This document shows positions 2,864-25,424 of a DNA stretch of 64,000 bases, piece after piece. The notes beneath the pieces are model-generated. The model was given only the letters and a program-made list of their open reading frames with translations, was not told where the DNA came from and ran no database searches. Where the stretch lies: positions 124,001 to 188,000 of IMG/VR virus record IMGVR_UViG_3300036770_003657; one strand, written 5' to 3'. A program made the position numbers and the translations under genes. Numbering within the stretch: position 1 is the first letter of the stretch; each line of letters begins with the position of its first letter.

Positions 2864-4263
2864 TGGCTATCGTTGATAAACAAAAGGTTGACCTATTATA
2901 TAAGAAACTTTTTGGTGTAGCCAAGACTGATTTTAATACACTAAAAGGTGCTAGTAACGAGGTTATTCCTAGTCCAGCACTGATTCGTGGTGATACTGTA
3001 TGGACACAGGCTAATAGTATACCAGCCATACCTGCTGTGGTTCCTAATATTGTTGAATACTTAACAATACAGTGTGAACCTGATGATACAACTACACCAA
3101 TAAGTGGAGTATACCCAACTTGGATAGCTAAAGGTGGTAGTCCTTTAGAAAGATTAAAGTATTGGATACCACCTGAGTTTGGATCAGCTTATTTGATCGA
3201 AGTATATATAGGTGATCCTGATAATGGTGGAACAAGAATATTTGATGCTGGTATAAATGATAAAGGTGCTTATTACTTTGACTATATGTCAGGTATTTTA
3301 AACTTTACAAATTATACCGATAATGGTGGTAGTACAAATGTTATCCCAGATGGGTTAAGTGGTAATGATATTTGGGTAAGAGGTTATAGATATATAGGTT
3401 TTGTTGGTATAACAGATCAACAAGAGGGTAAGTTTGGTAACTTGCAACTTATCAATAATACTATAGTTGCCATAAACACTGATATAAATGATGATCCAGA
3501 TACTGGTGATGTAATAATTCAACCTAGATTAGATGGATATGTTAGGCTACAGGGCAGTAGATTTACTCAACATGCTACAGATACGGATACTGATGACACT
3601 TATGATTCAGGTAATCCTTATAATACTATATATGAAAAAACAAGTTTATTGGCGAGAGCCAGTACTCTTAATGGTGAGGAAGTAGAAGTCACACTAGATG
3701 GACTTAGTCCAAGTAGTACAAATAGATTTGTATTGGCTAATGATACAACTTATAAGGTACAGGTCAATATAACTGGTAGACTGGATGGCGGAACAGAAAG
3801 CGCTATCTGGAATATAGATTTTTTAGCAAGCAGAGGAGCTAATGCATCGACGACGTCAATAATTGGAAACACTATAACTGAGAAAGTTGCTGGGTCGCCA
3901 AGTACCGCAGTAACTATAGTTACGGTCGCCGCCGGAAGTTTTATCAATGGTAATGTTTATAAAATTAAGACATTAGGCACAACTAATTGGGCCAGTATAT
4001 CAAGTGATGGTGCTACTAGAGATTATGAAGTGGGTAGTGTATTCACTGCTATAGGTTCTGGCACTGGAGATGGTACTGCTGATGAATATTTAAGCCCTAC
4101 TGATCAACGTACTTATAGTTGGGCAGTAAAAGCAGAAGCAGATACTACTAATGGATTGATTAAAATATTGGTTAAAGGTCCTAGTAAATTGAGTGGATCA
4201 GATCCAGATAAAACCATCAAATGGTTGGCAGCGATAAATACATTGGACATTTATGAGACCTAA
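2863..4263 (+). CDS. Virion structural protein (466 aa)
   Basis: TAATG coupling to the upstream gene; Thr/Gly/Asp-rich; located between fibre-like genes. Confidence 0.6.
   Translation: MAIVDKQKVDLLYKKLFGVAKTDFNTLKGASNEVIPSPALIRGDTVWTQANSIPAIPAVVPNIVEYLTIQCEPDDTTTPISGVYPTWIAKGGSPLERLKYWIPPEFGSAYLIEVYIGDPDNGGTRIFDAGINDKGAYYFDYMSGILNFTNYTDNGGSTNVIPDGLSGNDIWVRGYRYIGFVGITDQQEGKFGNLQLINNTIVAINTDINDDPDTGDVIIQPRLDGYVRLQGSRFTQHATDTDTDDTYDSGNPYNTIYEKTSLLARASTLNGEEVEVTLDGLSPSSTNRFVLANDTTYKVQVNITGRLDGGTESAIWNIDFLASRGANASTTSIIGNTITEKVAGSPSTAVTIVTVAAGSFINGNVYKIKTLGTTNWASISSDGATRDYEVGSVFTAIGSGTGDGTADEYLSPTDQRTYSWAVKAEADTTNGLIKILVKGPSKLSGSDPDKTIKWLAAINTLDIYET
4234..4240 (+). promoter_or_regulatory. Possible late promoter (ATAAATA) for the 81-aa ORF and the giant fibre gene
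   Basis: GATAAATA inside the 3' end of the upstream CDS, 32 nt before the ATG at 4273. Could be chance in AT-rich DNA. Confidence 0.35.
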
Positions 4264-4272
4264 GGAACGACG

Positions 4273-4518
4273 ATGACGTTGCGCTGGAATATTGATTTTA
4301 AGCCCGCAGACGCAGATTTCTGCTATGTCGACACCTACACAACTCATAATTCTAAAACATTCTACGAGAATATTTTTTACTGTAAGCCAGTAAAATATGA
4401 TGTCGATAGCACCCTATTAAATTATAACAATAATAACAAGCTATTCTACTCAACCTATTGGCCAAATAACGATATAACTCGTCATGCTGTAAGCCAAGGT
4501 GGTAGAATAAGCAGATGA
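4273..4518 (+). CDS. Small hypothetical protein (81 aa)
   Basis: SD AAGGA before the ATG; fills the gap between genes; its TGA overlaps the giant gene ATG (ATGA). Confidence 0.55.
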   Translation: MTLRWNIDFKPADADFCYVDTYTTHNSKTFYENIFYCKPVKYDVDSTLLNYNNNNKLFYSTYWPNNDITRHAVSQGGRISR

Positions 4519-7500
4519 GTGTATTAAAGAGATATTTCCAAGGCGTACAAGGAGTCCAAGACGGTTGGCGCTCCATAATGATTGGCGAAAAGGGTGCCCA
4601 AGGTACTCAAGGCCTACAAGGTGACAGCGCAGTTGGTGGATTTTTCTTATGGGAACAAACTACACCAGCTGTAGTTTGGGAAATTCCTCATAACTTAGGA
4701 GCACGAATTGTAGTCGTGCAGTTGGCCAATACCGATGGTGAAAGTATTCAAGAAGGTTTACCAGGTAGTCCATATATAGAATTTATTGATTCTAGTAATT
4801 TAAAGGTATATTTTAGCACAGCTACAGCAGGATATGCAGCAATTACCAGTGGTGGTGGCTTACAGGGTATCCAAGGTATGCAGGGTATCCAAGGTATACA
4901 GGGTGATTTGGGACCACAAGGTATTCAAGGTCGTCAAGGTACACAAGGTTTACAGGGTATTCAGGGTCTAGGTTTTGTATGGCGTGGCCTTTGGAATATA
5001 AACGAAACTTATAATTTTAATGACGTAGTATACTATAATGGTGGTAGCTGGGTAGCCAAACAACCAAATAGTGGTCAAGCAGCTCCATTCCAAGGTAGCG
5101 CATATTGGGATATAATGACAGCCCAAGGACCACAGGGTATACAAGGTGTACAAGGTAGATTTGGTCCACAAGGACCACAAGGACCACAAGGAACACAGGG
5201 TTTACAAGGTGATTTAGGTATACAAGGTATACAAGGTATACAGGGTATTCAAGGTCGAAGCATTATTTGGAAAGGTTATTGGACTGACACTGATGAATAT
5301 TTTATCGGTGATATGGTATACTATAATGGTGGTAGCTGGGTTTCAACTAGAGATGCTAGTTTATCGGATCCAAACATTAATAAAGAGCCATATGTAGGCA
5401 GTCAATTTTGGGATAAGAGTACTAGCCAAGGTATTCAAGGTGTACAAGGCGTACAAGGTGTACAAGGCGTCCAAGGCGTACAAGGTGTACAAGGCGTCCA
5501 AGGTATACAGGGTGTTGGATTCCAATGGCGTGGTACTTGGAGTGCTACTGAAGAATATGATATTAACCATACAGTATACTATAACGGCTTTAGTTATGTA
5601 AGTTTAATAAGATTCAACACTGGAAATAGACCAGATGACCCAGCTCATGATGATAAATGGGATATTGTAGCAGCACAGGGTGTACAGGGTGTCCAAGGCG
5701 TACAGGGTGTACAAGGTGTCCAAGGTGTCCAAGGTGTACAAGGTGTACAAGGCGTTCAAGGTGTACAAGGCGTTCAAGGTGTACAAGGCGTACAAGGCGT
5801 ACAGGGTGTACAGGGTGTCCAAGGCGTACAGGGTGTACAGGGTGTACAGGGTGTACAGGGTATCCAAGGTTTCAGTATTTTATGGCAAGGACAGTGGCAA
5901 AATAATGTAACCTATAATACAAACCACGTTGTTTATTATGATGGCAACAGCTGGATAGCATTAGAGGATGGAATAGAAGGTATACATCCAGGACCAGAAG
6001 ATGATAACGGTTATTGGGGAAGAATGACCGCTCAAGGTATCCAAGGTCTACAAGGTGTCCAAGGTGTACAAGGTGTACAAGGTGTACAAGGTGTACAGGG
6101 CGTTCAAGGCGTACAAGGTGTACAGGGTGTACAGGGCGTACAAGGTGTACAGGGCGTACAAGGTGTACAGGGCGTACAAGGCGTACAGGGTGTACAGGGT
6201 GTACAGGGCGTTCAGGGCGTTCAGGGTGTACAAGGTGTACAAGGTGTACAGGGCGTACAAGGTGTACAAGGCGTACAAGGTGTACAGGGTGTACAGGGCG
6301 TACAAGGTGTACAAGGTGTACAAGGCGTACAGGGTGTACAGGGTGTACAGGGCGTACAAGGTGTACAGGGTGTACAAGGTGTACAGGGTGTACAAGGTGT
6401 ACAAGGTGTACAGGGCGTACAGGGCGTACAGGGTGTACAGGGTGTCCAAGGTGTACAAGGTGTACAAGGTGTACAAGGTATTCAAGGTATTCAAGGTCTT
6501 GGATTTAACTGGAAAGGTGTTTGGGATCCTAATACTACATATTTTACTAATGATGCAGTATTTTATAATGGTAGTGCTTATAATAGTCAATATGATTATA
6601 ATATAGGTAAACGTCCAGATCTAACATGGGACCCTGAAGCATGGAGTATGATTGCAAGCCAAGGTATTCAAGGCTTGCAGGGTGTACAAGGTGTACAAGG
6701 TGTACAAGGCGTACAGGGTGTACAAGGCGTACAGGGTGTACAGGGTGTACAAGGCGTACAGGGTGTACAAGGTGTCCAAGGTGTACAGGGTGTCCAAGGC
6801 GTTCAAGGTGTACAGGGTGTTCAAGGCAATCAAGGTGTACAAGGCGTACAAGGCGTACAAGGTGTACAAGGCGTTCAAGGTGTACAGGGTGTACAGGGCG
6901 TACAGGGTGTACAAGGTGTACAAGGTGTACAAGGTGTACAGGGTGTACAGGGTGTCCAAGGCGTACAAGGTGTCCAAGGTGTCCAAGGTGTACAAGGTGT
7001 ACAAGGCGTTCAAGGTGTACAAGGCGTTCAAGGTGTACAAGGCGTTCAAGGTGTACAAGGTGTACAGGGTATTCAAGGCTTTGGTATCATTTGGCGTGGT
7101 TTATACGATTTTGATACAAGATATTATCAAAATGAAGTTGTATTCTATAATGGCGCAAGCTGGATTGTAAAATATACTGGTGTAGAAGGGGTAACTCCAG
7201 GTAGTGAAAATCCAACTACTGTACCAGGACCAGAGTATAATGATACATTTTGGGAATTATTAGCTAGTCAAGGTATTCAAGGATTACAAGGTGTACAGGG
7301 TGTACAAGGTGTACAAGGTGTACAGGGTGTACAGGGTGTACAAGGTGTACAGGGTGTACAGGGTGTACAAGGCGTACAAGGTGTCCAAGGTGTACAAGGT
7401 GTCCAAGGTGTCCAAGGTGTACAAGGTGTACAAGGCGTACAGGGTGTACAGGGTGTACAGGGTGTACAGGGCGTACAGGGTGTACAAGGTGTACAGGGTG

Positions 7501-10500
7501 TACAAGGCGTACAAGGTGTACAGGGTGTACAGGGTTTACAGGGCGTTCAAGGCGTTCAAGGTGTACAGGGCGTACAAGGCGTTCAAGGTGTACAAGGTGT
7601 ACAAGGTGTACAGGGTGTCCAAGGCGTACAGGGCGTTCAAGGTGTACAAGGCGTTCAAGGTGTACAAGGTGTACAAGGTGTACAGGGCGTACAAGGCGTA
7701 CAGGGTGTACAAGGTGTACAAGGTGTACAGGGTGTACAAGGTGTCCAAGGTGTACAAGGTGTACAGGGTGTCCAAGGTGTACAGGGTGTCCAAGGTGTCC
7801 AAGGTGTACAAGGTGTACAAGGTGTACAAGGTGTACAGGGTGTACAAGGCGTACAGGGTGTACAAGGCGTACAGGGTGTACAAGGTGTTCAAGGTGTACA
7901 GGGCGTTCAAGGTGTACAAGGTGTCCAAGGTGTCCAAGGCGTTCAAGGTGTCCAAGGTGTCCAAGGCGTACAGGGTGTACAGGGTGTACAAGGCGTACAG
8001 GGTGTACAAGGTGTACAAGGCGTACAAGGTGTACAAGGAGTACAGGGTGTTCAAGGCGTCCAAGGTATCCAAGGTATTCAAGGTCGCGGACCTGTATGGC
8101 GCGGTGATTGGAGTTCTACTGAACAATATCAAACAGATGATATGGTATACTATGATGGTAATACTTTTATTGCTATCACAGGCGACGCTACAACAAGATT
8201 CAGTGGTGTAGAAACTAGACCATTATTAAGCCCAGTAGGAGCAGGTTATCCAGGTGATGTGAACGATACTTACTGGAATAGAATGACCGCTCAGGGTGTC
8301 CAAGGTTTACAGGGCGTACAAGGTGTACAGGGTGTACAGGGTGTACAAGGAGTACAAGGAGTACAAGGTGTACAAGGCGTACAAGGCGTTCAAGGTGTAC
8401 AGGGCGTTCAAGGTGTACAGGGCGTTCAAGGCGTACAGGGTGTACAAGGAGTACAAGGTGTACAAGGCGTACAGGGTGTACAGGGTGTACAAGGCGTTCA
8501 AGGCAATCAAGGTGTGCAAGGTGTACAAGGAGTACAGGGTGTACAGGGTGTACAAGGTGTACAGGGCGTTCAAGGTGTACAAGGTAATCAAGGTGTCCAA
8601 GGTGTACAAGGCGTACAGGGCGTACAAGGTGTACAGGGTGTCCAAGGCGTACAAGGTGTACAAGGTGTGCAAGGCGTACAAGGCGTACAAGGCGTACAAG
8701 GCGTACAAGGTATACAGGGTGTACAAGGCGTACAGGGTGTACAGGGTGTACAAGGCGTACAAGGTGTTCAGGGTGTACAAGGTGTACAGGGCGTACAGGG
8801 CGTACAGGGTGTCCAAGGTGTACAAGGTGTACAGGGCGTTCAAGGTGTACAAGGTGTCCAAGGTGTACAGGGTGTACAGGGTGTACAGGGTGTACAAGGC
8901 GTACAGGGTGTACAGGGTGTCCAAGGTGTCCAAGGTGTACAAGGTGTACAAGGTGTACAGGGTGTACAAGGCGTACAGGGTGTACAAGGCGTACAGGGTG
9001 TACAAGGCGTACAGGGTGTACAAGGCGTTCAAGGCAATCAAGGTGTCCAAGGTGTCCAAGGTGTTCAAGGTGTACAAGGTGTACAGGGCGTTCAAGGCGT
9101 TCAAGGCAATCAAGGTGTACAGGGCGTTCAAGGCGTACAAGGTGTACAAGGCGTACAAGGCGTACAAGGCGTACAAGGTGTACAAGGTGTACAGGGTGTT
9201 CAAGGTGTACAAGGTGTACAGGGCGTTCAAGGTGTACAAGGTGTACAAGGCGTACAGGGTATTCAAGGATTTGGATTACGTTGGAAAGGCGAGTACGATC
9301 CTTCCACAATTTACCAACAAAATGATGTAGTTTATTATGACGGTGATAGCTTTATAGCAGTATATCCAATTGACCATTATAATGCACCGTTTGGACAATT
9401 CAGTGGTCAAGTACCAGAATTTACTCCAGGCGATGTAAACACTACATATTGGAATAGAATAACAGCTCAAGGTATTCAAGGTGTACAGGGTGTTCAAGGT
9501 GTACAGGGTGTTCAAGGTGTACAGGGTGTCCAAGGTGTACAGGGTGTACAAGGTCTACAAGGCATTCAGGGACTACAAGGTGTACAGGGTGTACAGGGTG
9601 TTCAAGGCGTCCAAGGTGTTCAAGGCGTCCAAGGTGTACAAGGCGTCCAAGGTGTTCAAGGCGTCCAAGGTGTACAAGGCGTCCAAGGTGTTCAAGGTGT
9701 ACAGGGTGTACAGGGTGTACAGGGTGTACAGGGTGTACAGGGTGTACAAGGCGTTCAAGGTGTTCAAGGTGTACAGGGTGTACAAGGCGTACAGGGTGTA
9801 CAAGGTGTACAGGGTGTACAAGGCGTACAGGGTGTACAAGGTGTACAGGGTGTACAGGGTGTACAGGGCGTACAAGGTGTACAGGGCGTACAAGGCGTAC
9901 AAGGTGTACAAGGTGTACAAGGTGTACAAGGCGTCCAAGGTGTACAAGGTGTCCAAGGTGTCCAAGGTGTACAGGGTGTACAAGGCGTACAAGGCGTACA
10001 GGGTGTACAAGGCGTACAAGGTGTACAGGGTGTACAGGGTGTACAAGGTGTACAAGGCGTTCAAGGTGTTCAAGGTGTTCAAGGTGTTCAAGGTGTACAA
10101 GGCGTACAAGGTGTACAAGGCGTACAGGGTGTACAAGGCGTACAAGGTGTACAGGGTGTACAAGGCGTACAAGGTGTACAGGGTGTACAGGGTGTACAAG
10201 GTGTTCAAGGCGTCCAAGGTGTACAAGGTGTACAAGGTGTACAAGGTGTACAAGGTGTCCAAGGCGTACAGGGCGTACAAGGTATACAGGGCTTTGGTAT
10301 TATCTGGCGTGGAATGTATGATTTCACAACAAGATATTATCAAAACGAAGTTGTTTTCTACAATGGTGCCAGCTGGATAGTTCGTTATACTGGTGTAGAA
10401 GGATTAACACCTGGTATAGATGACCCAACTACAGTACCAGGACCAGAATATAATGACACATATTGGGAATTACTAGCCAGCCAAGGTATCCAAGGATTAC

Positions 10501-13500
10501 AAGGTGTACAAGGTGTACAGGGTGTACAAGGTGTACAGGGCGTTCAAGGTGTACAGGGCGTACAGGGTGTACAGGGCGTACAGGGTGTCCAAGGTGTACA
10601 GGGTGTACAGGGTGTACAGGGTGTACAAGGTGTACAAGGCGTTCAAGGTGTACAAGGCGTTCAAGGTGTTCAAGGTATACAAGGTGTACAAGGTGTACAA
10701 GGTGTACAGGGTGTACAAGGTGTACAAGGTGTACAAGGCGTTCAAGGTGTCCAAGGTGTCCAAGGCGTTCAAGGTGTCCAAGGTGTACAGGGTGTACAAG
10801 GTGTACAGGGTGTACAAGGTGTCCAAGGTGTCCAAGGTGTACAGGGTGTACAGGGTCAGCAAGGTATTCAAGGTCTTGGATTTAATTGGCGTGGAGACTG
10901 GAAAGTAGATGAAGTATATGCCAAGAACGATGCTGTAAGGTATGATGGAACATCTTGGGTTTCTCTAACAAAAGATAATATAGGTAATAACCCAAGGCTT
11001 ACAGAAGGTGTTGAATGGGACGTAATTGCTGCACAGGGTGTACAGGGTGTTCAAGGTATTCAAGGTGTACAGGGCGTACAGGGCGTACAAGGTGTACAAG
11101 GCGTTCAAGGTGTACAGGGTGTTCAAGGCATTCAAGGATTCAGCTTTGTTTGGAGAGGTGAATACGATCACACAGCTGATTATCAACAGAATGATGTAGT
11201 TTATTATAATGGCAGTAGTTTTGTAGCTATTTGGCCAATTAATTTTTATGATGTCATTGGTAGCCAATTCAGTGGTGAAGTACCAGAAGTTATCGGAGTA
11301 TACGGTGAGCCAGGAACATTAAACAGTACATATTGGGCAAGAATGTCAGCTCAGGGCGTACAAGGTGTACAGGGTGTACAAGGCGTACAGGGTGTACAAG
11401 GTGTACAGGGTGTACAAGGCGTACAGGGTGTACAAGGTGTACAGGGTGTACAAGGTGTACAGGGCGTACAAGGTGTACAGGGCGTACAAGGTGTACAGGG
11501 TGTTCAAGGTGTACAAGGTGTACAAGGCGTTCAAGGCGTACAGGGTGTACAAGGAGTACAAGGTGTACAAGGTGTACAAGGCGTTCAAGGCAATCAAGGT
11601 GTACAGGGCGTTCAAGGCGTACAAGGTGTACAAGGCGTACAAGGCGTACAAGGTGTCCAAGGTGTACAAGGCGTTCAAGGCGTTCAAGGCGTACAAGGTG
11701 TACAAGGTGTACAAGGTGTACAGGGTGTACAAGGTGTACAGGGCGTTCAAGGCGTGCAAGGTGTACAAGGTGTACAGGGTGTTCAAGGTGTACAAGGTGT
11801 ACAAGGTGTACAAGGTGTACAAGGCGTACAGGGTGTACAGGGTATACAGGGTGTCCAAGGTGTCCAAGGCGTACAGGGTATACAAGGTTTTGGTATTATT
11901 TGGCGTGGATATTACGACTTCAATACTACATATTTCCAAAACGAAGTTGTTTTCTATGATGGAAATAGTTGGATAGTAAAATACACTGGAGTAGAAGGTG
12001 TTCCTACAGGTATCAGTAATCCAGCAGCAGTTCCTGGACCAACCGATATTGATACTTGGTGGGAAAGATTAAGTAGCCAAGGTATTCAAGGTTTACAAGG
12101 CGTTCAAGGTGTACAAGGTGTACAAGGCGTTCAAGGTGTACAAGGCGTTCAAGGTGTACAGGGTGTACAGGGTGTACAAGGTGTACAAGGCGTACAGGGT
12201 GTACAGGGCGTTCAAGGCGTTCAAGGTGTACAGGGCGTACAAGGCGTACAGGGTGTACAAGGTGTACAAGGCGTACAAGGCGTACAAGGTGTACAAGGCG
12301 TACAAGGTGTACAAGGCGTTCAAGGTGTACAAGGTGTACAAGGCGTTCAAGGCGTACAAGGCGTTCAAGGCGTACAAGGCGTACAAGGTGTACAGGGTGT
12401 ACAAGGCGTCCAAGGCGTTCAAGGCGTCCAAGGCGTACAAGGTGTACAAGGCGTACAGGGTGTACAAGGCGTACAGGGTGTACAAGGTGTCCAGGGTATC
12501 CAAGGTATACAAGGCGGACAGGGTATACAAGGCGTACAGGGCGTTCAAGGTGTACAAGGTGTACAAGGCGTACAGGGTGTACAAGGCGTACAGGGTGTAC
12601 AAGGCGTACAGGGTGTACAGGGCGTACAGGGTGTACAAGGCGTACAGGGTGTACAAGGCGTACAGGGTGTACAAGGCGTTCAAGGCGTACAGGGCGTTCA
12701 AGGTGTCCAAGGTGTACAGGGTGTACAGGGTGTACAAGGTGTCCAAGGTGTACAGGGTGTACAAGGTGTACAAGGTGTACAGGGTGTACAAGGTGTCCAA
12801 GGTGTACAAGGACAACAAGGTATTCAAGGCGGCGGTGTAACTTGGAAAGGCATTTGGAATTCAACAACTAATTACATTGAAAATGATGCAGTATTTTACA
12901 ATGGTAATTCTTGGATCAGCGTATTAGAACCAAATATAGATAATGTACCTAATTTAATGTCAATTTATTGGGACATGCTTGCTAGCCAAGGTATTCAAGG
13001 CTTGCAAGGCGTACAGGGTGTACAGGGTGTACAGGGCGTTCAAGGTGTACAGGGCGTTCAAGGTGTACAGGGCGTTCAAGGTGTACAGGGCGTTCAAGGC
13101 GTACAGGGTGTACAGGGCGTACAAGGTGTACAGGGTGTACAGGGTGTACAGGGTGTACAGGGTGTACAGGGTGTACAGGGTGTACAGGGCGTACAGGGCG
13201 TACAGGGCGTACAGGGCGTACAAGGTGTACAGGGTGTACAGGGTGTACAAGGTGTACAAGGCGTACAAGGCGTACAGGGCGTTCAAGGTGTACAGGGCGT
13301 ACAGGGCGTTCAAGGTGTACAAGGTGTACAGGGTATTCAAGGTGTACAGGGTATTCAAGGTGTAGGATTAATATGGAAAGGTCAGTGGAGTGATTCAGTA
13401 TCTTACATAGCCAACGACATTGTATTTTACGATGGCAGTGCTTATATTTCAGTTCAGTCAACTAACCTAAATAATAATCCAACAATTGAAGATAGATCAA

Positions 13501-16500
13501 CTGAATTTACAACGCCTGGAACTTATACTTGGATAGCACCTCCAGGAGTTACCAGTGTAAGTGCTGTAGCAGTTGGTGGTGGATCTAGACCACAAATAAT
13601 AGGTAGTGGATTCAGCGCCAAGAGTTATGGTGGTGGCGGTGGTGGTTTAGGTTATAAGAATAATATACCAGTCGTTCCTGGCCAAGCTTATACAGTAGTA
13701 GTTGGTAGTGGAGCAGCCACAGGCACATATGGTGATGGTGGTGATAGCTACTTTATCAGTTCAATTACAGTAAAAGGTGGCGGAGCTACTGGCAGCACAG
13801 GTGGTACTTATGTAGGTGATGGCGGTGGTAGCGGTGGTAACGGTGGTGCACCAAACGGAAATTCAAGTGGCGGCGCAGGTGATGGCAGTGCTACATCAGG
13901 TGGTGGTGGTGGTGCAGGTGGTTATAGTGGCAACGGTGGCGTTGGCGGAACTATGTTGGTTGACAGTGGTAATGGAGCCAATTTTGGTGCTAACGGCAGT
14001 GGTGGCGGTGGTGCTGGTGGTGGCGGAAGAAATAGTCACGGTGGCGGCGGTGGCGGTGGTGTTGGTATCTATGGCGAAGGAGACAGTGGACTTGCCAATA
14101 CTACTGCTTATGTACCAAACGTAGGTGGCTGGGGCGGCAATGGTGGTAGTGGTGGTACTACTGGTGGTACTGGAACTCAATCAGGTGTTAATGGTGGTGG
14201 CGGCCTATACGGTGGTGGTGCTGGTGGTGGCTGGGCTGGATATGGTGATGCTGCTGGTGGTGGTGCAGTAAGAATCATATGGGGTGCAGGACGTAGTTTC
14301 CCAAGCACAAACGTCAGTACTGCTAGTGATTTTGTTGAAACATCTACCAATGTTCAATACTGGCAGCGATTTACCAGTCAAGGTATACAGGGCGTACAAG
14401 GTCTTCAAGGTGTACAGGGCGTACAGGGCGTACAGGGCGTACAGGGCGTACAGGGTGTACAAGGCGTACAGGGTGTACAAGGCGTACAAGGTATCCAAGG
14501 TGTACAAGGTGTACAGGGTATCCAAGGTGTACAGGGTGTACAAGGTGTACAGGGTGTACAAGGTGTACAGGGTGTACAAGGTATACAGGGTGTACAAGGT
14601 ATACAGGGTGTACAGGGTGTACAGGGCGTACAGGGCGTACAGGGTGTACAGGGTGTACAAGGTATCCAAGGTGTAAGTATAACTTGGAAGGGAGTTTATG
14701 ATAATGCCGCTCAATATAGCCAAAATGACGTAGTATTTGAAAACGGCAGTAGTTGGATAGCAGTTTATCCATATACAAGTGGAACGTTTAGTGGCATAAG
14801 ACCAGGTGAAACAGTAGGTTGGATCACATATTGGAATATGATGACCAGCCAAGGTATTCAAGGTGTACAGGGTGTACAGGGTGTACAAGGTATTCAAGGT
14901 GTACAGGGTGTACAAGGTATTCAAGGTGTACAGGGTGTACAGGGTATACAAGGTGTACAAGGCGTACAAGGTATTCAAGGTGTCCAGGGTGTACAGGGTA
15001 TACAAGGTGTACAAGGCGTACAAGGTATTCAAGGTGTACAGGGTGTACAAGGTATTCAAGGTGTACAGGGTATCCAAGGTGTACAGGGTGTACAGGGTAT
15101 ACAAGGTGTACAGGGTGTACAGGGTATACAAGGTGTCCAGGGTGTACAGGGTGTACAGGGTATACAAGGTGTACAGGGTGTACAGGGTATTCAAGGTGTA
15201 CAGGGTGTACAGGGTATTCAAGGTGTACAAGGCGTACAAGGTATCCAAGGCGGTCAAGGTATTCAAGGTGTACAGGGTGTACAAGGTATCCAAGGCGTCC
15301 AAGGTGTACAAGGTATTCAAGGTGTACAGGGTGTACAAGGCATCCAAGGTGTACAAGGTGTACAAGGTATTCAAGGCGGTCAGGGTATACAAGGTGTACA
15401 AGGTATACAGGGTGTCCAAGGCATCCAAGGTGTACAAGGTATTCAAGGCTTCCAAGGCACCAAGGGTGAGGGCTTTACATTCTTGGGAGATTGGAGTCCT
15501 GTAACAGAATATATTAAGAATGACAGTGTATACTATAATGGTTCAAGCTATACAAGCACTTACGGTGATATAACATATGCTGGAGGTGGATTTGCTAATA
15601 TTAATCAACGTCCAGGTGAACTAGTAACAATATCAAATGTTAGCCTAACTGCTAGTGGTGTATTCAGTTGCGATAGTGTAAACCTATATAAAGCAGAAGT
15701 TATTAGAGTAAGTGGTACAGTTCCAGCAGGATTTACAATTGAGAATCCAGATAGTCCTGCTCAAGCTCCAACTTACTATACAGCTGGTCAACAAGTTGAT
15801 AATGATTATTATGTAATCACATATCCAAATAATCCAACTACAACCTTTACATTAGGACGTAGTCAATTCTCTGTAGATCCAATTAGTACAACTGGTACAG
15901 GCAGTTTAAGTGGGTTAACATTTAAGGCTGTTCCATGGTTAATTATTAGTGCTCAAGGTATTCAAGGATTACAAGGTGTACAAGGTATACAGGGTGTACA
16001 AGGTATACAGGGTGTACAAGGTATACAGGGCGTACAGGGTGTACAAGGTATACAAGGTGTACAAGGTGTACAAGGTATTCAAGGTGTACAAGGTATTCAA
16101 GGTGGTCAGGGCATACAAGGTGTACAAGGTATTCAAGGTGTACAAGGTATACAGGGTATTATTGGTACTCCAGGTGGTTATACAGCAAATTATAATTGGG
16201 ATAGTAGCACAGCAGTTGCCGATCCAGGTGTAGGTAATGTAACTATTGAGCGTAGTTGGACAGATCAAACTGCTGGTCAAGTTTATATCAATCTTGACAA
16301 GTATGACGCAGATGGACAAGATCGTGCAGCGTGGGTCAATGCTATCAAGTTCTTTGGTAGCGCAAGTAGCTACTATGGTGTTATTACAATTATGCCAGAA
16401 GGTGCTACAAATCAGCGCTGGACCGGTGTTATCACCGTAGTAAATGATCTCAGTACACATTTTAGACTACAGCTAACCTTTGTTGATAGTCAAGGATCAG

Positions 16501-19500
16501 CCCCAACAGTTGGACAAAAATTAGGCGTCAGCTTCCAGCCAGCTGGTCAACAGGGTATCCAAGGCGTACAAGGTATCCAAGGCGTACAAGGTATCCAAGG
16601 TGTACAAGGTGTACAAGGTATCCAAGGTGGTCAAGGCATCCAAGGTGTACAGGGTGTACAAGGTATACAAGGCGTACAAGGCGTACAAGGTATCCAAGGC
16701 GTACAAGGTATCCAAGGTGTACAGGGTGTACAGGGTATACAGGGTGTACAAGGCGTACAAGGCATACAAGGTGGTCAAGGCATACAAGGCGTACAGGGTG
16801 TACAGGGTATCCAAGGTGTACAAGGTGTACAGGGTATACAGGGCGTACAGGGTGTACAAGGTATCCAAGGTGGTCAAGGCATCCAAGGTGTACAGGGTGT
16901 ACAGGGTATACAGGGCGTACAGGGTGTACAAGGTATACAAGGTGGTCAAGGTATACAAGGTGTACAGGGTGTACAGGGTATACAGGGCGTACAGGGTGTA
17001 CAAGGTATCCAAGGTGTACAAGGTATACAGGGTATTCAAGGTTCAAGTATCACGTGGAGAGGCCAATACAGTCCAACAACTGTATACAATACAAACGACG
17101 TAGTATTTGAAAATGGTCAAAGCTGGGTTGGTGTAAGAGGTACAGGTAATAGTCAAACATTAACTAGTGTAGCACACAGCGGTAGTGGTGTGTTTACTTG
17201 TGCTGCTGCTACATTATTTGTTGGTGACCAAGTTACTGTAAGTGGAACAAATGGTGGCAACGTAGTATTACCAGGATACAGTGCTAGTGGTACAAATTAT
17301 TATATTATAGCTACAAATGGTACTACACAATTTACTTTAAGTACTACACTAAACGGATCTGCTGCTACAGCTACCACAGGTACTACAGTCAGTGGATCAA
17401 TGATATTTGTTGTACCAACAGGATTTGGAAATGTAAGACCTAACCTAACACAAACTAATCATTGGAACTTAATGACTAGCCAAGGTATCCAAGGTGTACA
17501 GGGTGTACAGGGTGTACAAGGTATCCAAGGTGTACAGGGTGTACAGGGTATACAAGGTGGTCAAGGCATACAGGGTGTACAAGGTGTACAGGGTGTACAA
17601 GGCATACAAGGTGGTCAAGGTATCCAAGGTGTACAAGGTATACAGGGCGTACAAGGTGTACAAGGTATCCAAGGTGTACAGGGTATTCAAGGTATTACTG
17701 GTTTAGGTATTACTTGGAAAGGAACTTGGACTAGTTCAACAGTTTACAATAGCAATGACGTAGTATTCTACAACGGCAATAGCTGGATTGGTGTACGTGG
17801 AACAGGTAACAGTGTAGCATTAAGTGGTGTAAGTATCGGGGCTAGTGGCGTAATATCCTGTACTGCTACAAGCTTGCCAGCAGGATTCCAAGTAGGTGAT
17901 CAAGTTCTAGTTGCAGGCATTAATAGTGGAACTGGTGCATTACCAAGTTACAGCGCCAGCGGCACTTACTATTATATTATAGCTACAAATGGTAGCACAC
18001 AATTTACCATAAGTACAACAGCTGGTGGTGCTGCTGCTAGTACAACTTCTGGTACTGTAAGTGGTGCAATGACCTTTACTGTAGCAACAGGTTTTGTCAA
18101 TGTCATTCCAAACTTAACTAATACAAACCACTGGAACCAAATGACCAGCCAAGGTATCCAAGGCATCCAAGGTGTACAAGGTGTACAGGGCATACAAGGT
18201 GTACAAGGTGTACAGGGTATACAAGGTGTACAAGGACGTCAAGGTGTACAGGGTGTACAAGGTATCCAAGGTGTACAAGGTGTACAAGGTATACAAGGTG
18301 GTCAAGGCATTCAAGGTGTACAGGGCGTACAAGGTATACAGGGTGTACAAGGACGTCAAGGTGTACAGGGTGTACAGGGCATACAGGGTGTACAAGGCGT
18401 ACAAGGTATACAGGGTGTACAAGGCGTACAAGGTATACAAGGTGGTCAAGGCATTCAAGGTGTACAGGGTGTACAAGGTATACAGGGTGTACAAGGTGTA
18501 CAAGGTATCCAAGGCGTACAGGGTCAGCAAGGTATTCAAGGTTCAGGCTTTAAGTGGCGTGGTGTTTGGGCTCCACAATTTGACTATGCTGTTAGTGATA
18601 TGGTATCACACTTGGGTAGCACATATGTTAGCTTAACTCAGTATCTTCCACAAACACTAGCAAATGTTCAAATTATATCTGCTGGTAAAATAACTTGTAA
18701 CACTCCAACTAATGCATTAAATCCAGGTGATGGTCTTTATGCTATAGGTGTTAAAACTGGAACAGGGTCTATAACTGGTTATAATAGTGCAGGAACAAAT
18801 TATTTCATAACAACAGTTAGCAATAATGCTGGCACTACTACATTAACTTTAAGTGCCAATTATAATCCGTATGTAACAGTTAGTACCACAGCAGGTACAA
18901 GCACTGGTATTACTTTCTACGCACCAACTTTTGTACCAACTAGCTTTACTAAAGATCAATATGATAATGGTCAATCAAGTGTAGGTGCTTGGCAGTTAGC
19001 AGGTTCACAGGGTATTCAGGGTGTACAAGGCGTACAAGGTGTACAAGGTATACAGGGCGTACAAGGTATACAGGGCGTACAAGGAGTACAGGGTATACAA
19101 GGTGTACAAGGTATACAGGGTATTCAAGGTGCAAGCCCAACTTGGAGAGGAACATATACAAGTGGTGTAGCATACAATACTAACGATATGGTATTCCATA
19201 ATGGTAATACATATATGGCCATTTATGGTACAGGTAATACTGTAGCATTAAGTGGTGTAAGTATTGGAGCTAATGGAACATTTACTTGTACAGCAGCAAG
19301 CCCAGCTCTTGTAGTTGGTAATGGTGTTAGAATCGTGGGCGCTGCCAGTGGTACTGGTAGTATTAGTGGTTACACAGAAGGTGCAACTTATTATATCACA
19401 GCTACAAACGGTAGTACAAGCTTTACTTTAAGTTCCACAATCGGCGGTGCAGCAGTAACAACTACTGCTGGTACAAGCACAGGATTAACATTCCAACATC

Positions 19501-22500
19501 CAGTAAGTTTTGCTAATCAAGTTCCAGCAACAGGTCAACCCCCAGTAGTTAATACAACTTACTGGAATCAGATGACCAGCCAAGGTATCCAGGGTGTACA
19601 GGGTGTACAGGGTGTACAAGGTATCCAAGGTGTACAAGGCGTACAAGGTATACAAGGTGGTCAAGGTATACAGGGTGTACAGGGTATACAGGGCGTACAA
19701 GGTATACAAGGTATTCAAGGCTTTAGTGTAACTTACAGAGGACAATACAATCCTGCTACAGTATACACACAGAACGATGTGGTATTTGAAAATGGACAAA
19801 GCTGGATTGCTATATGGCCAATTACAACAAGTACATTTAGTAATGTAAGACCAGGAGTAACAGCAGGTTGGGCTAACTATTGGGGCAACTTAACTAGCCA
19901 AGGTATACAGGGTGTACAAGGTGTACAAGGTGTACAAGGTATTCAAGGTGTACAAGGACGTCAAGGTGTACAAGGTATACAAGGTGTACAAGGCGTACAA
20001 GGTATTCAAGGTGTACAAGGTGTACAGGGTATACAGGGATTAAGTATCAATTGGAAAGGCCAGTTTAATCCTGCTACAGCATATAGTCAAAACGATGTAG
20101 TATTTGAAAACGGCGCAAGCTGGATAGCAAAATGGCCATATGCTAGTGGAACCTTTACAGGAATCAGACCAGGAGTAACAGTAGGCTGGGCTACATACTG
20201 GGATCAAATGACCAGCCAAGGTATCCAAGGTGTACAGGGTGTACAGGGTATCCAAGGTGTACAGGGTGTACAGGGTATCCAAGGTGTACAGGGTGTACAA
20301 GGTATACAGGGTGTACAAGGTGTACAAGGTATCCAAGGTGGTCAAGGTATACAAGGCGTACAAGGTATTCAAGGTGTACAAGGCGTACAAGGTATTCAAG
20401 GTGTACAGGGTGTACAAGGTATACAGGGCTTTAGTGTAACTTATAGAGGAATCTATAACAATGCTACAGTTTATACTCAAAATGATGTAGTATTTGAAAA
20501 TGGACAAAGTTGGATAGCAGTGTATCCAATTACAACAGGTACATTTAGTGGTCAACGTCCAAGTTTAGCAAATACAACATATTGGGGTCAATTAACAAGT
20601 CAAGGTATACAGGGTGTACAAGGTGTACAAGGTATACAAGGTGGTCAAGGTATCCAAGGTGTACAAGGTGTACAAGGTATACAGGGCGTACAAGGTGTAC
20701 AAGGTATCCAAGGTGTACAGGGTGTACAGGGTATACAGGGTGTACAAGGACGTCAAGGTGTACAGGGCATACAAGGTGTACAGGGTGTACAAGGTATACA
20801 AGGTGTACAAGGTGTACAAGGTATCCAAGGTGGTCAAGGTATCCAAGGCGTACAAGGTATTCAAGGTGTACAAGGTGTACAGGGTATCCAAGGATTTAGC
20901 GTAACTTACAGAGGAATATATAATAACGCCACAGTTTACACTCAAAATGATGTAGTATTTGAAAATGGACAAAGTTGGATAGCAGTATATCCAATAACTA
21001 GTGGAACATTTAGTGGTCAACGTCCAAGTTTAGCAAACACAACATATTGGGGTCAGTTAACAAGTCAGGGTATACAAGGTGTACAGGGTGTTCAAGGTAT
21101 TCAAGGTGGTCAAGGTATACAAGGTGTACAAGGTATACAAGGTATCCAAGGTGGTCAAGGTATTCAAGGTGTACAGGGTGTACAGGGTATACAGGGTGGA
21201 CAAGGTATTCAAGGTCGTCAAGGTATACAAGGTATCCAAGGTGGACAAGGTATACAGGGTATTCAAGGTGGTCAAGGTATCCAAGGTGTACAAGGTGTAC
21301 AAGGTATCCAAGGTGGACAAGGTATCCAAGGTGTACAAGGCGTACAAGGTATACAGGGTGGACAAGGTATACAAGGAGTACAGGGTGTACAAGGTATACA
21401 AGGTGGACAAGGTATTCAAGGTATCCAAGGTATCCAAGGATTTAGTGTTACATATCAAGGTGTATACAATAATGCTACAGTGTACACTCAAAATGATGTA
21501 GTATTTGAAAATGGACAAAGCTGGATTGCAATATATCCAGTAACAACAGGAACATTTAGTGGAATACGTCCAGGTGTAACAGTAGGTTGGGCTACATATT
21601 GGGGTAGATTAAGTCAACAAGGTATACAGGGTATACAGGGTGGACAAGGTATACAGGGTGTACAAGGTATCCAAGGTATCCAAGGTGGACAGGGCATACA
21701 GGGTGTACAAGGTATCCAAGGTATCCAAGGAGGCCAAGGTATTCAAGGTATCCAAGGTGGCCAAGGTATACAGGGTGTCCAAGGTGTTCAAGGTATACAG
21801 GGTGGACAAGGTATACAAGGTAGACAGGGTATACAGGGTCAACAAGGACTACAGGGTACACAGGGTCAACAAGGTATCCAAGGACAGCAAGGTACACAGG
21901 GTATACAGGGTCAACAAGGACTACAGGGTACACAAGGACAACAAGGTATCCAAGGTCAACAAGGTACACAGGGTATACAGGGTCAACAAGGATTACAGGG
22001 TACACAAGGACAACAAGGTATACAAGGTCAACAAGGTACACAGGGTATACAGGGTCAACAAGGTACACAAGGACTACAGGGTACACAAGGACAACAAGGT
22101 ATACAAGGACAGCAAGGTACACAGGGTATACAGGGACAACAAGGTACACAAGGTCAGCAAGGTATACAGGGTACACAAGGTCAGCAGGGGACACAAGGTG
22201 TTCAAGGATTCCAAGGATTCCAAGGTTATCAAGGTGTACAGGGTGAACAAGGTATACAGGGTGTACAAGGTATTCAAGGATTCCAAGGATTTATTGGTGA
22301 TCAAGGTACAACAGGTTCACAAGGTACAACAGGTGATACAGGCTTACAGGGATTACCAGGACCACAAGGTACAGATGGACAAACTGGAGCACAAGGTCCA
22401 CAAGGTCCACAAGGTTTAGATGGAACAATTGGAACATTAAGTTTAGCAACATTCAAGAGCGTAGTAGCAGGTGCCGCAAACTTCCAAGACTTCCAAACAG

Positions 22501-22517
22501 CAGTAGCAGCACTATAA
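4515..22517 (+). CDS. Giant collagen-like (Gly-X-Gln)n fibre protein with repeated Trp-rich bead modules (6000 aa)
   Basis: Uninterrupted 18-kb ORF with Gly at every third residue in the tracts ([12 protein letters not shown]). Tracts are separated by 25 W(R/K)G.[WY]..Y..ND.V.(Y/F).G.S[WY]...P...YW modules, one of which holds a Gly-rich domain. Confidence 0.9.
5430..22220 (+). repeat. Degenerate 9-bp coding tandem repeats (GG[T/C] [G/A]T[A/T/C] CA[A/G])n in about 25 tracts
   Basis: Directly visible, e.g. ggtgtacaa/ggtgtacag/ggcgtacaa; variation is mostly at third codon positions. Confidence 0.95.
21828..22043 (+). repeat. 72-bp higher-order repeat x3 ([24 protein letters not shown])
   Basis: Units at 21828-21899, 21900-21971 and 21972-22043 encode the same 24 aa. 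Confidence 0.85.
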
Positions 22518-25374: not shown

Positions 25375-25402
25375 TTGACAATGTAAAAAAAATCTATATA
25401 AT
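25375..25402 (+). promoter_or_regulatory. Sigma70-type promoter
   Basis: Perfect TTGACA (25375-25380), 16-nt spacer, perfect TATAAT (25397-25402), upstream of the glycosyltransferase operon. Confidence 0.7.
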
Positions 25403-25424
25403 ACTAGCATAGATAACTATAATT

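What the first reader, a model, noticed from the sequence alone, without database searches (positions are those of the whole stretch)
4515..22517. 6000-aa beaded collagen-like fibre with a micron-scale predicted contour
Seen: one uninterrupted 18-kb ORF. My rough tally is about 2,500 aa non-collagen and about 3,500 aa (~1,150 triplets) Gly-X-Y. Established: a collagen triple helix rises about 0.286 nm per residue. Inference: roughly 1 micrometre of flexible rod carrying 25 binding beads, far longer than T4 long tail fibres; it could act as a fishing-line or net appendage for finding hosts in dilute water or for binding particles or capsule.
Basis: partly seen in the sequence, partly recalled or inferred. 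Interest (0 to 1): 0.85.

Follow-up and report, generated by a model that had tools for sequence, protein, structure and literature searches.

The report
Giant beaded collagen-like phage fibre gene
A jumbo bacteriophage from a metagenome encodes a real, evolutionarily conserved 6,000-residue protein made of 27 collagen-like (Gly-Val-Gln)n segments separated by small sugar-binding-type beads, which if it folds as collagen would be a flexible virion fibre about one micrometre long, far longer than any described phage fibre.

Summary
Window 4515..22517 (+) is one uninterrupted 6,000-aa ORF with 1,182 Gly-X-Y triplets (813 GVQ, 212 GIQ) in 27 runs, separated by 26 globular spacers.

It is not an assembly artefact:
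- Every 99-mer is unique.
- Synonymous codons inside the tracts are arranged almost randomly.
- Two independently assembled relatives have complete orthologs of 6,481 and about 6,247 aa at the same locus.
- Other contigs reproduce ten consecutive tract lengths exactly, although synonymous divergence is near saturation (dN/dS 0.09 in the tracts).

The parts are stock modules of viral collagen-like fibre proteins:
- 25 CBM5/12-like beads, five of them with an inserted β-barrel
- one 121-aa knob whose predicted fold recurs in many viral collagen-repeat proteins
- one Gly_rich_2 domain
- a conserved N-terminal module and a conserved 25-aa C-terminal tail

The gene lies in the tail/neck structural module of a ~400-kb T4-like jumbo myovirus.

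Best reading: a trimeric, segmented, about 1.0–1.1 µm (contour) virion fibre that acts as a multivalent glycan adhesin. Triple-helix formation, virion location and ligand are all inferred. The real reach would be well below the contour length. This is a new, extreme variant of a known kind.

The parts
4515..22517 (+). Giant ORF of 6,000 aa: 27 collagen-like runs and 26 internal globular spacers
   Evidence: Orthologs of 6,481 and ~6,247 aa. dN/dS of 0.09-0.26 against L088.
4273..4518 (+). 81-aa gene whose stop overlaps the giant ORF's start (ATGA). Candidate fibre chaperone or adaptor (inference).
   Evidence: Syntenic in all 8 orthologous loci, with a shared PV(K/R)YDV motif. Start context. 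No Pfam or PHROG hit.
4515..4856 (+). N-terminal module (aa 1-114): conserved peptide MSVLK(R/Q)Y..W..I(M/L)IG, a 5-triplet mini-collagen, and a ~75-aa beta-rich 'HNLG' domain. Candidate virion-attachment end.
   Evidence: Conserved in 8 loci, including distant ones. No Pfam hit. ESM Atlas neighbours are ~120-aa viral proteins, some with Collagen.
4857..5261 (+). Invariant proximal unit: 13 triplets, a 51-aa bead, then 15 triplets
   Evidence: Identical lengths in all 8 loci examined.
5262..13367 (+). Proximal half (aa 250-2951): 12 small CBM5/12-like beads separated by runs of 10-109 triplets, most of them long. These run lengths vary between orthologs (the 'tether').
13368..14381 (+). 338-aa block: CBM5/12-like bead followed by a Gly_rich_2 domain. 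Present only in the window's version.
   Evidence: PF21722 at E = 2e-7, 31.6 bits against a cutoff of 24.3. Absent from c20, c18 and L090 in the layouts; L088 is open at its 5' end there and cannot be scored.
15474..15956 (+). 161-aa large bead (CBM-like N-terminal part plus an inserted domain). It is the first half of the conserved central landmark.
   Evidence: Present in the window, c20, c18, L088, L090 and L042.
16182..16544 (+). 121-aa knob: a beta-sandwich with one helix. This collagen-associated fold recurs in viral fibre proteins.
   Evidence: AF2 pLDDT 94, pTM 0.86. No significant PDB match. 35 BFVD matches at E <= 1e-3 with TM 0.63-0.85, most of them to viral 'collagen triple helix repeat' proteins.
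17049..19583 (+). Four large beads (aa 4179-4323, 4399-4546, 4679-4829, 4875-5023) separated by short runs of 25, 44 and 15 triplets. This is the most variable part between relatives and the candidate specificity region.
   Evidence: Amino-acid identity to L088 is 0.39-0.89, and dN/dS reaches 0.45. AF2 pLDDT 84. CBM_5_12 and E1_FCCH leads.
19728..21620 (+). Five small beads of 56-58 aa with spacers that lengthen toward the C-terminus (16, 24, 33, 42 triplets)
   Evidence: Amino-acid identity to L088 is 81-98% and dN/dS is 0.01-0.15.
21621..22439 (+). Terminal collagen run of 91 triplets. It is the only run in the distal half whose length differs among close relatives (91, 100, 72).
22440..22514 (+). 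25-aa C-terminal tail matching the pattern SLA.FK.VVA....F.DF...VAAL. Candidate trimer-registration cap or distal tip (inference).
   Evidence: The pattern is kept in all 9 C-terminal ends recovered, although the sequence diverges. Amino-acid identity to L088 is 28%.
758..4263 (+). Two conserved upstream structural genes of 701 aa (phrog_8578) and 466 aa (phrog_9417), syntenic with the giant gene
   Evidence: The N-terminus of the 466-aa protein matches the 'tail protein' gp134 of Caulobacter phage CcrBL9.
22532..25372 (+). Downstream 946-aa virion structural protein, syntenic in many relatives
   Evidence: Weak phrog_692 and phrog_697 hits. Orthologs follow the giant gene in 9 loci.

Best explanation
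The ORF is a genuine, translated gene of a ~400-kb T4-like jumbo myovirus. It encodes a single-chain fibre protein. Three chains most likely associate into a segmented collagen-type triple helix. It has 27 helical segments of 8.6-94 nm, adding up to 1,014 nm. The helix is interrupted 26 times by nodes, each made of three copies of a small globular domain.

The conserved N-terminal module and the length-invariant first ~25 nm dock on the virion, at either the baseplate or the neck. Next comes a sparsely beaded tether of roughly 600 nm whose length varies between relatives. A dense cluster of large, fast-evolving beads then sits at about 680-825 nm. These beads are CBM5/12-like with an inserted beta-barrel. 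The fibre ends in a tail of conserved small beads and a 25-aa cap.

In function it is a long, flexible, multivalent adhesin. Up to 75 CBM5/12-like modules per trimer would make weak, reversible contacts with polysaccharide, such as host capsule or envelope glycan, or glycan-rich particles. That would enlarge the capture radius and hold the virion near hosts until the tail machinery engages.

Shown here: the gene's reality, its architecture, its conservation, purifying selection on sequence and on segment length, module similarities, and the genomic context. Inferred: trimer and triple-helix formation, virion attachment and its polarity, and carbohydrate binding.
For: The ORF and its composition are established, and a run hits Pfam Collagen at E = 2e-48.

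The context is a phage structural module. gp15, gp13, the sheath, the tube and TerL all lie within 20 kb. TerL is 54% identical to PA5oct-type jumbo phages. The source contig is 399,796 bp.

The gene is real and conserved. Complete orthologs of 6,481 and ~6,247 aa and at least 5 partial ones sit at the same locus. dN/dS is 0.089 in the runs, 0.14 in small beads and 0.26 in large beads, at dS of about 1. Ten consecutive run lengths are identical to L088 although nucleotide identity is only 75-87%. The proximal unit 13-[51]-15 is invariant in 8 loci. All 99-mers are unique and synonymous codon order is near random.

The beads resemble CBM5/12. Every bead aligns to PF02839 in the same register (E = 4e-4 to 0.03). 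The bead profile's best PDB hit is the CBM12 of chitinase A1 (1ED7, E = 7e-4), followed by many chitinase and deacetylase CBM5/12 domains and by the phage A-1(L) short tail fibre 8KE9. The top ESM Atlas cluster for the large bead is a viral CBM_5_12 protein.

The 121-aa knob fold recurs in viral collagen-repeat and tail-fibre proteins. Multi-bead proteins form a large family: 8,242 representatives at E <= 1e-3.

Related 'hairy' jumbo myoviruses with long hair-like fibres are known from electron microscopy (PMC7824862, PMC13282480). Collagen-like repeats have long been taken as a tail-fibre signature in phages (PMC1079782).
Against: There is no experimental or proteomic evidence that the protein is made or is in virions.

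The tracts are almost free of proline, so triple-helix stability is unproven. From memory, Gln in the Y position is favourable in host-guest peptide studies, and Thr/Gln-rich bacterial collagens are known (PMC8968730).

No single bead reaches Pfam's gathering score for CBM_5_12 (15-20.8 bits against 26.2). The profile-to-PDB E-values are only about 1e-3.

A CBM-type fold can be purely structural. In phage A-1(L), the neck-fibre carbohydrate-binding module did not bind the host (PMC10966104).

No cultured phage has a detectable homolog of the bead region, so no virion data can be transferred. The attachment site and the polarity of the fibre are guesses based on conservation patterns.
Confidence: 0.6

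Rival explanations
1. Same molecule, different job and place. It is a neck or head 'whisker' or hair coat, not a host-finding tail fibre. In this reading it is the collagenous counterpart of T4 fibritin, or of the bead-chain neck fibres of phage A-1(L). It would tether virions to glycan-rich particles or mucus, or act as an environmental sensor or retainer of other fibres, without recognising the host.
For: The gene lies where wac and gp12 lie in T4 (T4 gene order from memory), next to the gp13, gp14-like and gp15 neck genes. Its design resembles fibritin: an N-terminal anchor, a segmented trimeric rod and a tiny C-terminal cap. A-1(L) has ~100-nm beaded neck fibres whose CBM does not bind the host (PMC10966104). 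Hairs on the head or sheath are seen in related jumbo phages.
Against: The upstream partner gene matches proteins annotated 'tail protein'. The fast-evolving large beads look like specificity determinants that track a variable ligand. There is no sequence similarity to fibritin or to neck-fibre proteins.
Confidence: 0.22
2. The Gly-Val-Gln tracts do not form a collagen triple helix. They are either disordered entropic spacers or another Gly-every-third structure such as polyglycine-II-type bundles or Gln-mediated beta assemblies. The protein would then be a much shorter, more compact brush or coat carrying lectin-like beads.
For: Only 8 X and 2 Y positions in 1,182 triplets are Pro, and the tracts contain no charged pairs. 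No trimerisation domain of a known kind was found. The C1q/TNF idea was rejected.
Against: Gly sits at every third residue without a single break across runs of up to 109 triplets. The Y position is near-uniform Gln. dN/dS in the tracts is 0.09 and tract lengths are strictly conserved. That implies an ordered, length-critical structure, not a disordered linker. The same knob and beads occur in many viral proteins annotated as collagen repeats.
Confidence: 0.1
3. Assembly artefact or dead gene: the 18-kb ORF results from collapsed, expanded or chimeric assembly of 9-bp repeats, or it is not expressed as one protein (for example it is processed into several shorter fibres).
For: Many IMG/VR contigs break inside this gene. 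JGI's gene caller did not call it as one gene. Frame is preserved under any indel of 9-bp units, so an open frame alone does not prove correct tract lengths.
Against: All 99-mers are unique. There are no long or higher-order repeats beyond the synonymous-shuffle expectation. There are three complete orthologs of 6,000-6,481 aa. Tract lengths are identical in contigs from other samples despite dS of about 1. The beads are under purifying selection. Proteolytic processing can be neither tested nor excluded.
Confidence: 0.05

Closest known systems
Phage collagen-like tail-fibre proteins ('bacteriophage collagen', Smith et al. 1998 as cited in PMC1079782; E. coli prophage EPclA-D, PMC3368898; P-SSM2 orf028)
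   Same: Gly-X-Y tracts are combined with small globular phage-fibre domains, the gene lies in the virion structural module, and a trimeric fibre is presumed. The knob fold is shared with cyanophage S-CAM7 and S-H34 collagen or tail-fibre proteins.
   Different: Those proteins are a few hundred to about 1,300 aa with one or a few collagen tracts. This one is 6,000 aa with 27 tracts, is nearly Pro-free (GVQ/GIQ), and has tract lengths conserved under saturating synonymous divergence.
CBM5/12 chitin-binding modules (PF02839; e.g. ChBD of B. circulans chitinase A1, PDB 1ED7)
   Same: The bead consensus W.G.(W/Y)x5-6Yx2(N/D)DxVx(Y/F)xGxx(W/Y)...W aligns in register with the Pfam profile and with 1ED7.
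   Different: All single beads score below Pfam's gathering cutoff. The beads are embedded in a collagen chain and not appended to an enzyme. No binding has been shown. Five beads carry a ~90-aa inserted barrel.
Bead-chain-like neck fibres of Anabaena myophage A-1(L) (PMC10966104) and T4 fibritin whiskers
   Same: These are flexible, beaded or segmented trimeric fibres attached to a myovirus by the N-terminus. The A-1(L) fibre has 16 beads and carries a distal carbohydrate-binding module.
   Different: The A-1(L) fibre is ~100 nm long and is assembled from about 16 separate trimers of three small proteins. Fibritin is a ~50-nm coiled coil (from memory). Here a single polypeptide spans ~1,000 nm using collagen-type spacers.
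Hair-like fibres of 'hairy' jumbo myoviruses (121Q, CBB, Atu_ph07, Y3) and head fibres of Tenacibaculum phages PTm1/PTm5 (PMC7824862, PMC13282480)
   Same: These are jumbo myoviruses, some related to this one by terminase and sheath, that carry long flexible accessory fibres proposed to help attachment in water.
   Different: Their fibre proteins are not defined. No homolog of the bead region was detected in any cultured phage genome.
Collagen-like fibre proteins of giant viruses (Klosneuvirus, Indivirus and Marseillevirus LCMAC collagen-repeat proteins) and Bacillus BclA
   Same: Collagen tracts are joined to globular knobs to form surface fibrils. The 121-aa knob fold is shared with the giant-virus proteins.
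   Different: Hosts and virion types differ. BclA's knob is C1q/TNF-like (from memory), which this knob is not. The sizes are about 5-15 times smaller.

Membership tests
Collagen triple-helix repeat proteins (PF01391) | Uninterrupted Gly at every third residue over many triplets | tested here: met
   27 runs of 10-109 triplets, 1,182 triplets in all. Pfam Collagen hit at E = 2e-48, 162 bits against a cutoff of 27.2.
Collagen triple-helix repeat proteins (PF01391) | Three chains form a right-handed triple helix (CD signature, cooperative melt, protease resistance) | not testable with these tools
   No multimer prediction or experiment is available. Inferred from the sequence pattern and from selection on tract length.
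Collagen triple-helix repeat proteins (PF01391) | Stabilising residues (Pro/Hyp, charge pairs, or Thr/Gln hydration network) | tested here: inconclusive
   Pro is almost absent (8 X and 2 Y positions) and there are no charge pairs. Gln fills 96% of Y positions. Gln/Thr-rich bacterial collagens are known (PMC8968730).
CBM5/12 carbohydrate-binding modules (PF02839) | Sequence match to the family profile above Pfam's gathering score | tested here: not met
   Nine beads were scanned singly and all score 15-20.8 bits against a cutoff of 26.2, with E = 4e-4 to 0.03. All align in the same register.
CBM5/12 carbohydrate-binding modules (PF02839) | Profile-level similarity to solved CBM5/12 domains, with the conserved aromatic/Gly signature | tested here: inconclusive
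   The profile of 25 beads hits 1ED7 at E = 7e-4 and about a dozen other chitinase or deacetylase CBM5/12 domains at E = 0.015-1. The aromatic at the first-Trp position, plus Y13, G23 and the C-terminal W, are conserved. The top ESM Atlas cluster is a viral CBM_5_12 protein at 0.93.
CBM5/12 carbohydrate-binding modules (PF02839) | Binds chitin, cellulose or another glycan | not testable with these tools
Gly_rich_2 glycine-rich domain (PF21722) | Profile match above the gathering score | tested here: met
   aa 2999-3166 of the protein score 31.6 bits against a cutoff of 24.3, E = 2e-7.
Phage tail/neck fibre proteins (virion structural) | Encoded within the virion morphogenesis module and syntenic with structural genes | tested here: met
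   It is flanked by PHROG structural proteins and lies within 6-20 kb of gp15, gp13, the sheath, the tube and TerL. The synteny is kept in relatives.
Phage tail/neck fibre proteins (virion structural) | Physically present in the virion | not testable with these tools
   No proteome or micrograph exists, and no cultured relative has a homolog.
C1q/TNF-like collagen-associated knobs (as in BclA, C1q) | Jelly-roll fold of the globular domain adjoining collagen | tested here: not met
   The confident model of the 121-aa knob (pLDDT 94) has no C1q/TNF hit in the PDB. The best match has E = 0.025 and TM of about 0.35-0.41, to unrelated beta-barrels.
T4 fibritin (wac) family | Segmented alpha-helical coiled coil with a C-terminal foldon | tested here: not met
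   The rod segments are Gly-X-Y, not heptads. No Pfam or PHROG fibritin hit was found. Only the overall design logic and gene position resemble fibritin.

The most novel reading that the evidence does not exclude
A clade of aquatic jumbo phages builds the longest known viral appendage, a ~1.0-1.1 µm fibre, from one ~0.6-MDa polypeptide that trimerises into a proline-free (Gly-Val-Gln)n collagen. In this reading each helical spacer's length is individually fixed by selection, so the fibre works as a molecular ruler or beaded fishing line. It places about 75 lectin-like modules and a cluster of rapidly evolving specificity beads at defined distances from the virion. That would greatly enlarge the host-capture radius or moor the phage to polysaccharide particles.
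Probability: 0.35. Interest if true: 0.85.

Novelty: new variant of a known kind. Interest (0 to 1): 0.66.

Why it matters
If the protein folds and assembles as predicted, it changes the scale at which a phage can reach for hosts or surfaces: hundreds of nanometres to a micrometre, against about 30-150 nm for typical tail fibres (from memory).

It would also be a natural, proline-free, recombinantly tractable collagen with tracts of up to 109 perfect triplets. That bears on the open question of what minimal sequence stabilises a triple helix, and on collagen biomaterials.

Exact conservation of tract lengths in a 9-bp tandem repeat, while synonymous sites are saturated, is a rare and clean case of selection on the physical length of protein spacers.

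There is a practical lesson too. Standard gene callers shred such genes (JGI split this one into about 15 off-frame calls plus one 2,344-aa piece), and assemblies often break inside them. Giant repeat fibres are therefore systematically under-reported in viromes.

Tried and rejected
1. C1q/TNF-like identity for the 121-aa knob was rejected. There is no such PDB match. The fold instead recurs in viral collagen-repeat proteins.

2. tblastn of bead-rich regions against 50,697 cultured-phage records found no match: aa 3640-5130 at E <= 1e-5 and aa 5072-5363 at E <= 0.01. The low-complexity filter and the short, diverged beads limit the sensitivity of these searches.

3. PDB fold search of the large bead gave only weak hits at E >= 0.011: the Uba1 FCCH barrel and phage tailspike N-terminal domains. 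I treat the FCCH-like insert as a lead only, supported by the ESM Atlas hit to PF16190 clusters.

4. The word-indexed search for giant orthologs returned 27 proteins of 3,332-6,483 aa. None is full-length or named, and several are animal collagens matching only the repeats.

5. The scan of genome contigs with the N-terminal 204 aa returned only collagen-tract matches in unrelated bacteria. There is no prophage and no host clue.

6. The sample's environment could not be determined from the searchable literature.

7. Pfam on the last 2,102 aa of the upstream 6,682-aa giant gene, and on the two small genes after it, gave nothing.

8. There are no tRNAs in the window.

9. The off-frame ORFs listed inside the gene were considered as possible real genes and rejected. 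By coordinates they fall largely within the GVQ tracts, where all six frames are open by construction. Selection (dN/dS of 0.09) acts in the Gly-X-Y frame.
Full report
OBSERVATION

Window 4515..22517 on the + strand is one ATG-initiated ORF of 6,000 codons with no internal stop.

An exact scan finds 27 Gly-X-Y runs of at least 8 triplets, 10 to 109 triplets long. They total 1,182 triplets, or 3,546 aa. The triplets include 813 GVQ and 212 GIQ. Gln occupies the Y position in 1,139 triplets, and Pro fills only 8 X and 2 Y positions. A representative run matches Pfam Collagen at E = 2e-48.

The remaining 2,454 aa consist of:
- a 114-aa N-terminal module
- 26 internal spacers
- a 25-aa C-terminal tail

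The raised GC content and GC skew of the region simply reflect the GGT-GTA-CAA codons.

IS IT REAL?

Four lines of evidence say yes.

(i) Assemblability. The tracts are near-perfect at the protein level, but they use 16 different 9-mers for GVQ. The longest exact repeat in the 18 kb is 92 bp and every 99-mer is unique.

(ii) No trace of recent slippage or assembler-made duplication. Shuffling synonymous codons gives longest repeats of 59-88 bp, against 92 bp observed. Self-identity is flat across lags of 9-90 nt.

(iii) Orthologs. The contig is JGI Ga0310126_0000016, 399,796 bp. IMG/VR holds relatives with the same flanking genes. After stitching overlapping loci:
- UViG_3300022752_000020 carries a complete 6,481-aa ortholog with 1,187 triplets.
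- UViG_3300022752_000018 carries a complete ~6,247-aa ortholog with 1,433 triplets.
- At least five further contigs begin or end inside the gene, which is typical of assembly breaks in repeats.

(iv) Selection, measured against L088 from another sample, whose downstream gene is 65% identical:
- Synonymous sites are near saturation (dS of about 0.7-2 in the non-repetitive beads).
- dN/dS is 0.089 in the tracts, 0.14 in small beads and 0.26 in large beads.
- Ten consecutive tract lengths are identical: 25, 56, 25, 44, 15, 16, 16, 24, 33, 42.
- A 96%-identical relative from a third sample (L085) reproduces the same lengths. Only the terminal tract differs, at 91, 100 and 72 triplets.

JGI's gene caller split the ORF into about 15 off-frame calls plus one 2,344-aa piece. 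The off-frame ORFs listed fall largely within the tracts and are artefacts of the repeat. A collapse of still longer perfect tracts cannot be excluded without long reads.

ANATOMY

The N-terminus (MSVLK(R/Q)Y..W..I(M/L)IG), a 5-triplet mini-collagen and a ~75-aa beta-rich domain are conserved in eight loci. This module has no Pfam match. Its ESM Atlas neighbours are ~120-aa viral proteins, some of which carry Collagen.

The next unit, 13 triplets then a 51-aa bead then 15 triplets, has identical lengths in all eight loci.

Twenty-five spacers share the motif W(R/K)G.(W/Y)x5-6Yx2NDxV(F/Y)xNGxS(W/Y)...W...(S/A)Q. They are 24-53% identical to the first bead, so they are diverged paralogs and not copies.
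- The nine beads scanned singly all align to Pfam CBM_5_12 in the same register, but below the gathering score.
- A profile of the 25 beads finds the CBM12 of B. circulans chitinase A1 (1ED7, E = 7e-4). It also finds about a dozen other CBM5/12 domains, the Anabaena CIS protein All3316, and the short tail fibre gp33 of phage A-1(L).

Five beads of 145-161 aa carry a ~90-aa insertion.
- The AF2 model (pLDDT 84) has no significant PDB analogue.
- Foldseek points weakly to the Uba1 region, and the ESM Atlas points to viral PF16190 E1_FCCH and CBM_5_12 clusters.

One 121-aa spacer is a different, confidently modelled domain (pLDDT 94).
- It has no solved analogue and is not C1q/TNF-like.
- Its fold recurs at TM 0.63-0.85 in 35 viral proteins, most of them annotated as collagen triple-helix repeat proteins. 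These come from uncultured tailed phages, Synechococcus phages S-CAM7 and S-H34, a lambda Stf-like fibre, and giant viruses.

One 338-aa block adds a Gly_rich_2 domain that scores above Pfam's cutoff. It is absent from the complete orthologs.

All C-termini recovered end in a 25-aa tail with a conserved hydrophobic pattern.

PHYSICAL MAP

At 0.286 nm per residue the helical parts sum to 1,014 nm. The layout is:
- 0-51 nm: closely spaced beads.
- About 96-680 nm: sparse beads on long spacers. These spacer lengths differ between orthologs.
- 682-824 nm: the 161-aa bead / 121-aa knob landmark and all four other large beads.
- To 936 nm: five conserved small beads with spacers that lengthen toward the C-terminus.
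- The end: a 78-nm terminal run and the C-terminal tail.

Divergence is mosaic. Small distal beads are 81-98% identical to those of L088, while large beads fall to 39-66% and show dN/dS of up to 0.45.

CONTEXT

The window belongs to a T4-like jumbo myovirus.
- It carries gp15 and gp13 homologs, a 1,121-aa sheath, tube proteins, gp32 and UvsX.
- Its TerL is 54% identical to that of PA5oct-type phages.

The giant gene is translationally coupled (ATGA overlap) to a syntenic 81-aa gene. It is preceded by conserved 701-aa and 466-aa proteins. The N-terminus of the 466-aa protein matches the 'tail protein' of phiCbK-like phages. It is followed by a 946-aa structural protein.

By position, using the T4 gene order from memory, it occupies the gp12/wac neighbourhood.

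INTERPRETATION

The best-supported reading is a virion fibre made of three chains in a segmented collagen-type helix, with trimeric lectin-like nodes.
- The invariant proximal geometry and conserved N-terminus suggest that this end docks on the virion.
- The variable-length middle behaves as a tether.
- The distal half is length-conserved within the window's clade, and its fast-evolving large beads look like the working end.

The function I propose is long-range, multivalent, reversible glycan adhesion. It is an inference drawn from three things: the CBM5/12-like beads, the known use of collagen-like fibres by phages (PMC1079782), and the hair-like fibres seen on related jumbo phages (PMC7824862, PMC13282480).

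Three caveats apply:
- A triple helix without proline is unproven.
It would not be 1 µm.
- A CBM fold can be purely structural. The A-1(L) neck-fibre CBM did not bind its host (PMC10966104).

Rival readings are given in the rival-explanations section: a neck or head whisker, a non-collagen fold, and an artefact or processed polyprotein.

COMPARISON AND NOVELTY

Every module is a stock part of viral collagen-like fibre proteins, and multi-bead proteins are common. The bead profile finds 8,242 representatives at E <= 1e-3. The 150 best-scoring ones are 330-4,341 aa long.

Five things are new:
- the scale: 6,000-6,481 aa, conserved in three complete orthologs
- the 27-segment design
- the almost pure GVQ/GIQ chemistry
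- the segment-by-segment length conservation
- the contour of about 1 µm

No such protein is described in the papers searched, and none is present as a named full-length entry in the protein databases. I therefore rate it a new, extreme variant of a known kind, of substantial but still purely computational interest.

Noticed in passing
L001:1-6310 (contig Ga0310126_0000016, about 0.8 kb upstream of window position 1): A second giant gene lies two genes upstream of the window start. JGI calls a 6,682-aa product there. Its last 2,102 aa have no Gly-X-Y runs (judged from the orthologous ORFs in c20 and c18) and no Pfam domain. Together the two giant genes take up about 38 kb, or ~10% of the phage genome.
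   Followed up: partly
window 4515-22517; L001 and L002 gene tables: JGI's gene calling splits the 18-kb ORF into about 15 small off-frame 'genes' plus one 2,344-aa piece. Many IMG/VR contigs also start or end inside this gene. Giant repeat fibre genes are therefore likely under-counted in protein databases.
   Followed up: yes
window 25375-28200: A perfect 12/12 sigma-70 consensus (TTGACA, 16 nt, TATAAT) at 25375-25402 precedes a three-gene cassette: DUF4422 (glycosyltransferase-like), a protein with weak sub-threshold TPR hits, and a GT2/galactosyltransferase-like protein. The cassette sits between the fibre genes and the neck genes and could glycosylate virion fibres or host surface. This is speculation.
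   Followed up: partly
window 53093-60028: At least five radical-SAM genes lie in this stretch, the first four in tandem with overlapping stop/start and one carrying a SPASM domain. They sit in a low-GC (0.25-0.31) region. The neighbouring ORFs at 48206-52872 and 61251-62645 that were scanned have no Pfam hit.
   Followed up: no
window 33182-36547 and 36581-38376: The tail sheath is unusually large at 1,121 aa. At the DNA level only its C-terminal ~500 bp matches sheaths of Rak2-like, PA5oct and Atu_ph07 jumbo phages. Two tube-like paralogs (208 and 360 aa) follow it.
   Followed up: partly
window 13368-14381: The Gly_rich_2-containing 338-aa block is an insertion specific to the window's fibre. 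The complete orthologs c20 and c18 have an ordinary small bead at the equivalent place.
   Followed up: partly
window 4857-22439 (layout): Spacer lengths rise steadily away from two bead clusters. From the N-terminus they run 13, 15, 10, 22, 52, 47, 91, 109. After the last large bead they run 16, 16, 24, 33, 42, 91. Similar ramps occur in L087, L090, L092 and c18. I have no explanation for this.
   Followed up: partly
L040, L049, L055 (contigs binned as giant-virus MAGs) and BFVD hits: Bead-like modules occur next to collagen tracts on contigs binned as giant-virus MAGs. The 121-aa knob fold occurs in Klosneuvirus, Indivirus and Marseillevirus collagen-repeat proteins. This suggests either module sharing between phages and giant viruses or mis-binning.
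   Followed up: no
L024:6386-16837 (IMGVR_UViG_3300042197_001846): A distinct complete 3,484-aa beaded collagen ORF has 41 short runs (460 triplets, GIQ/GLQ-rich) and 8 beads. It shows that other large architectures of the same parts exist.
   Followed up: no
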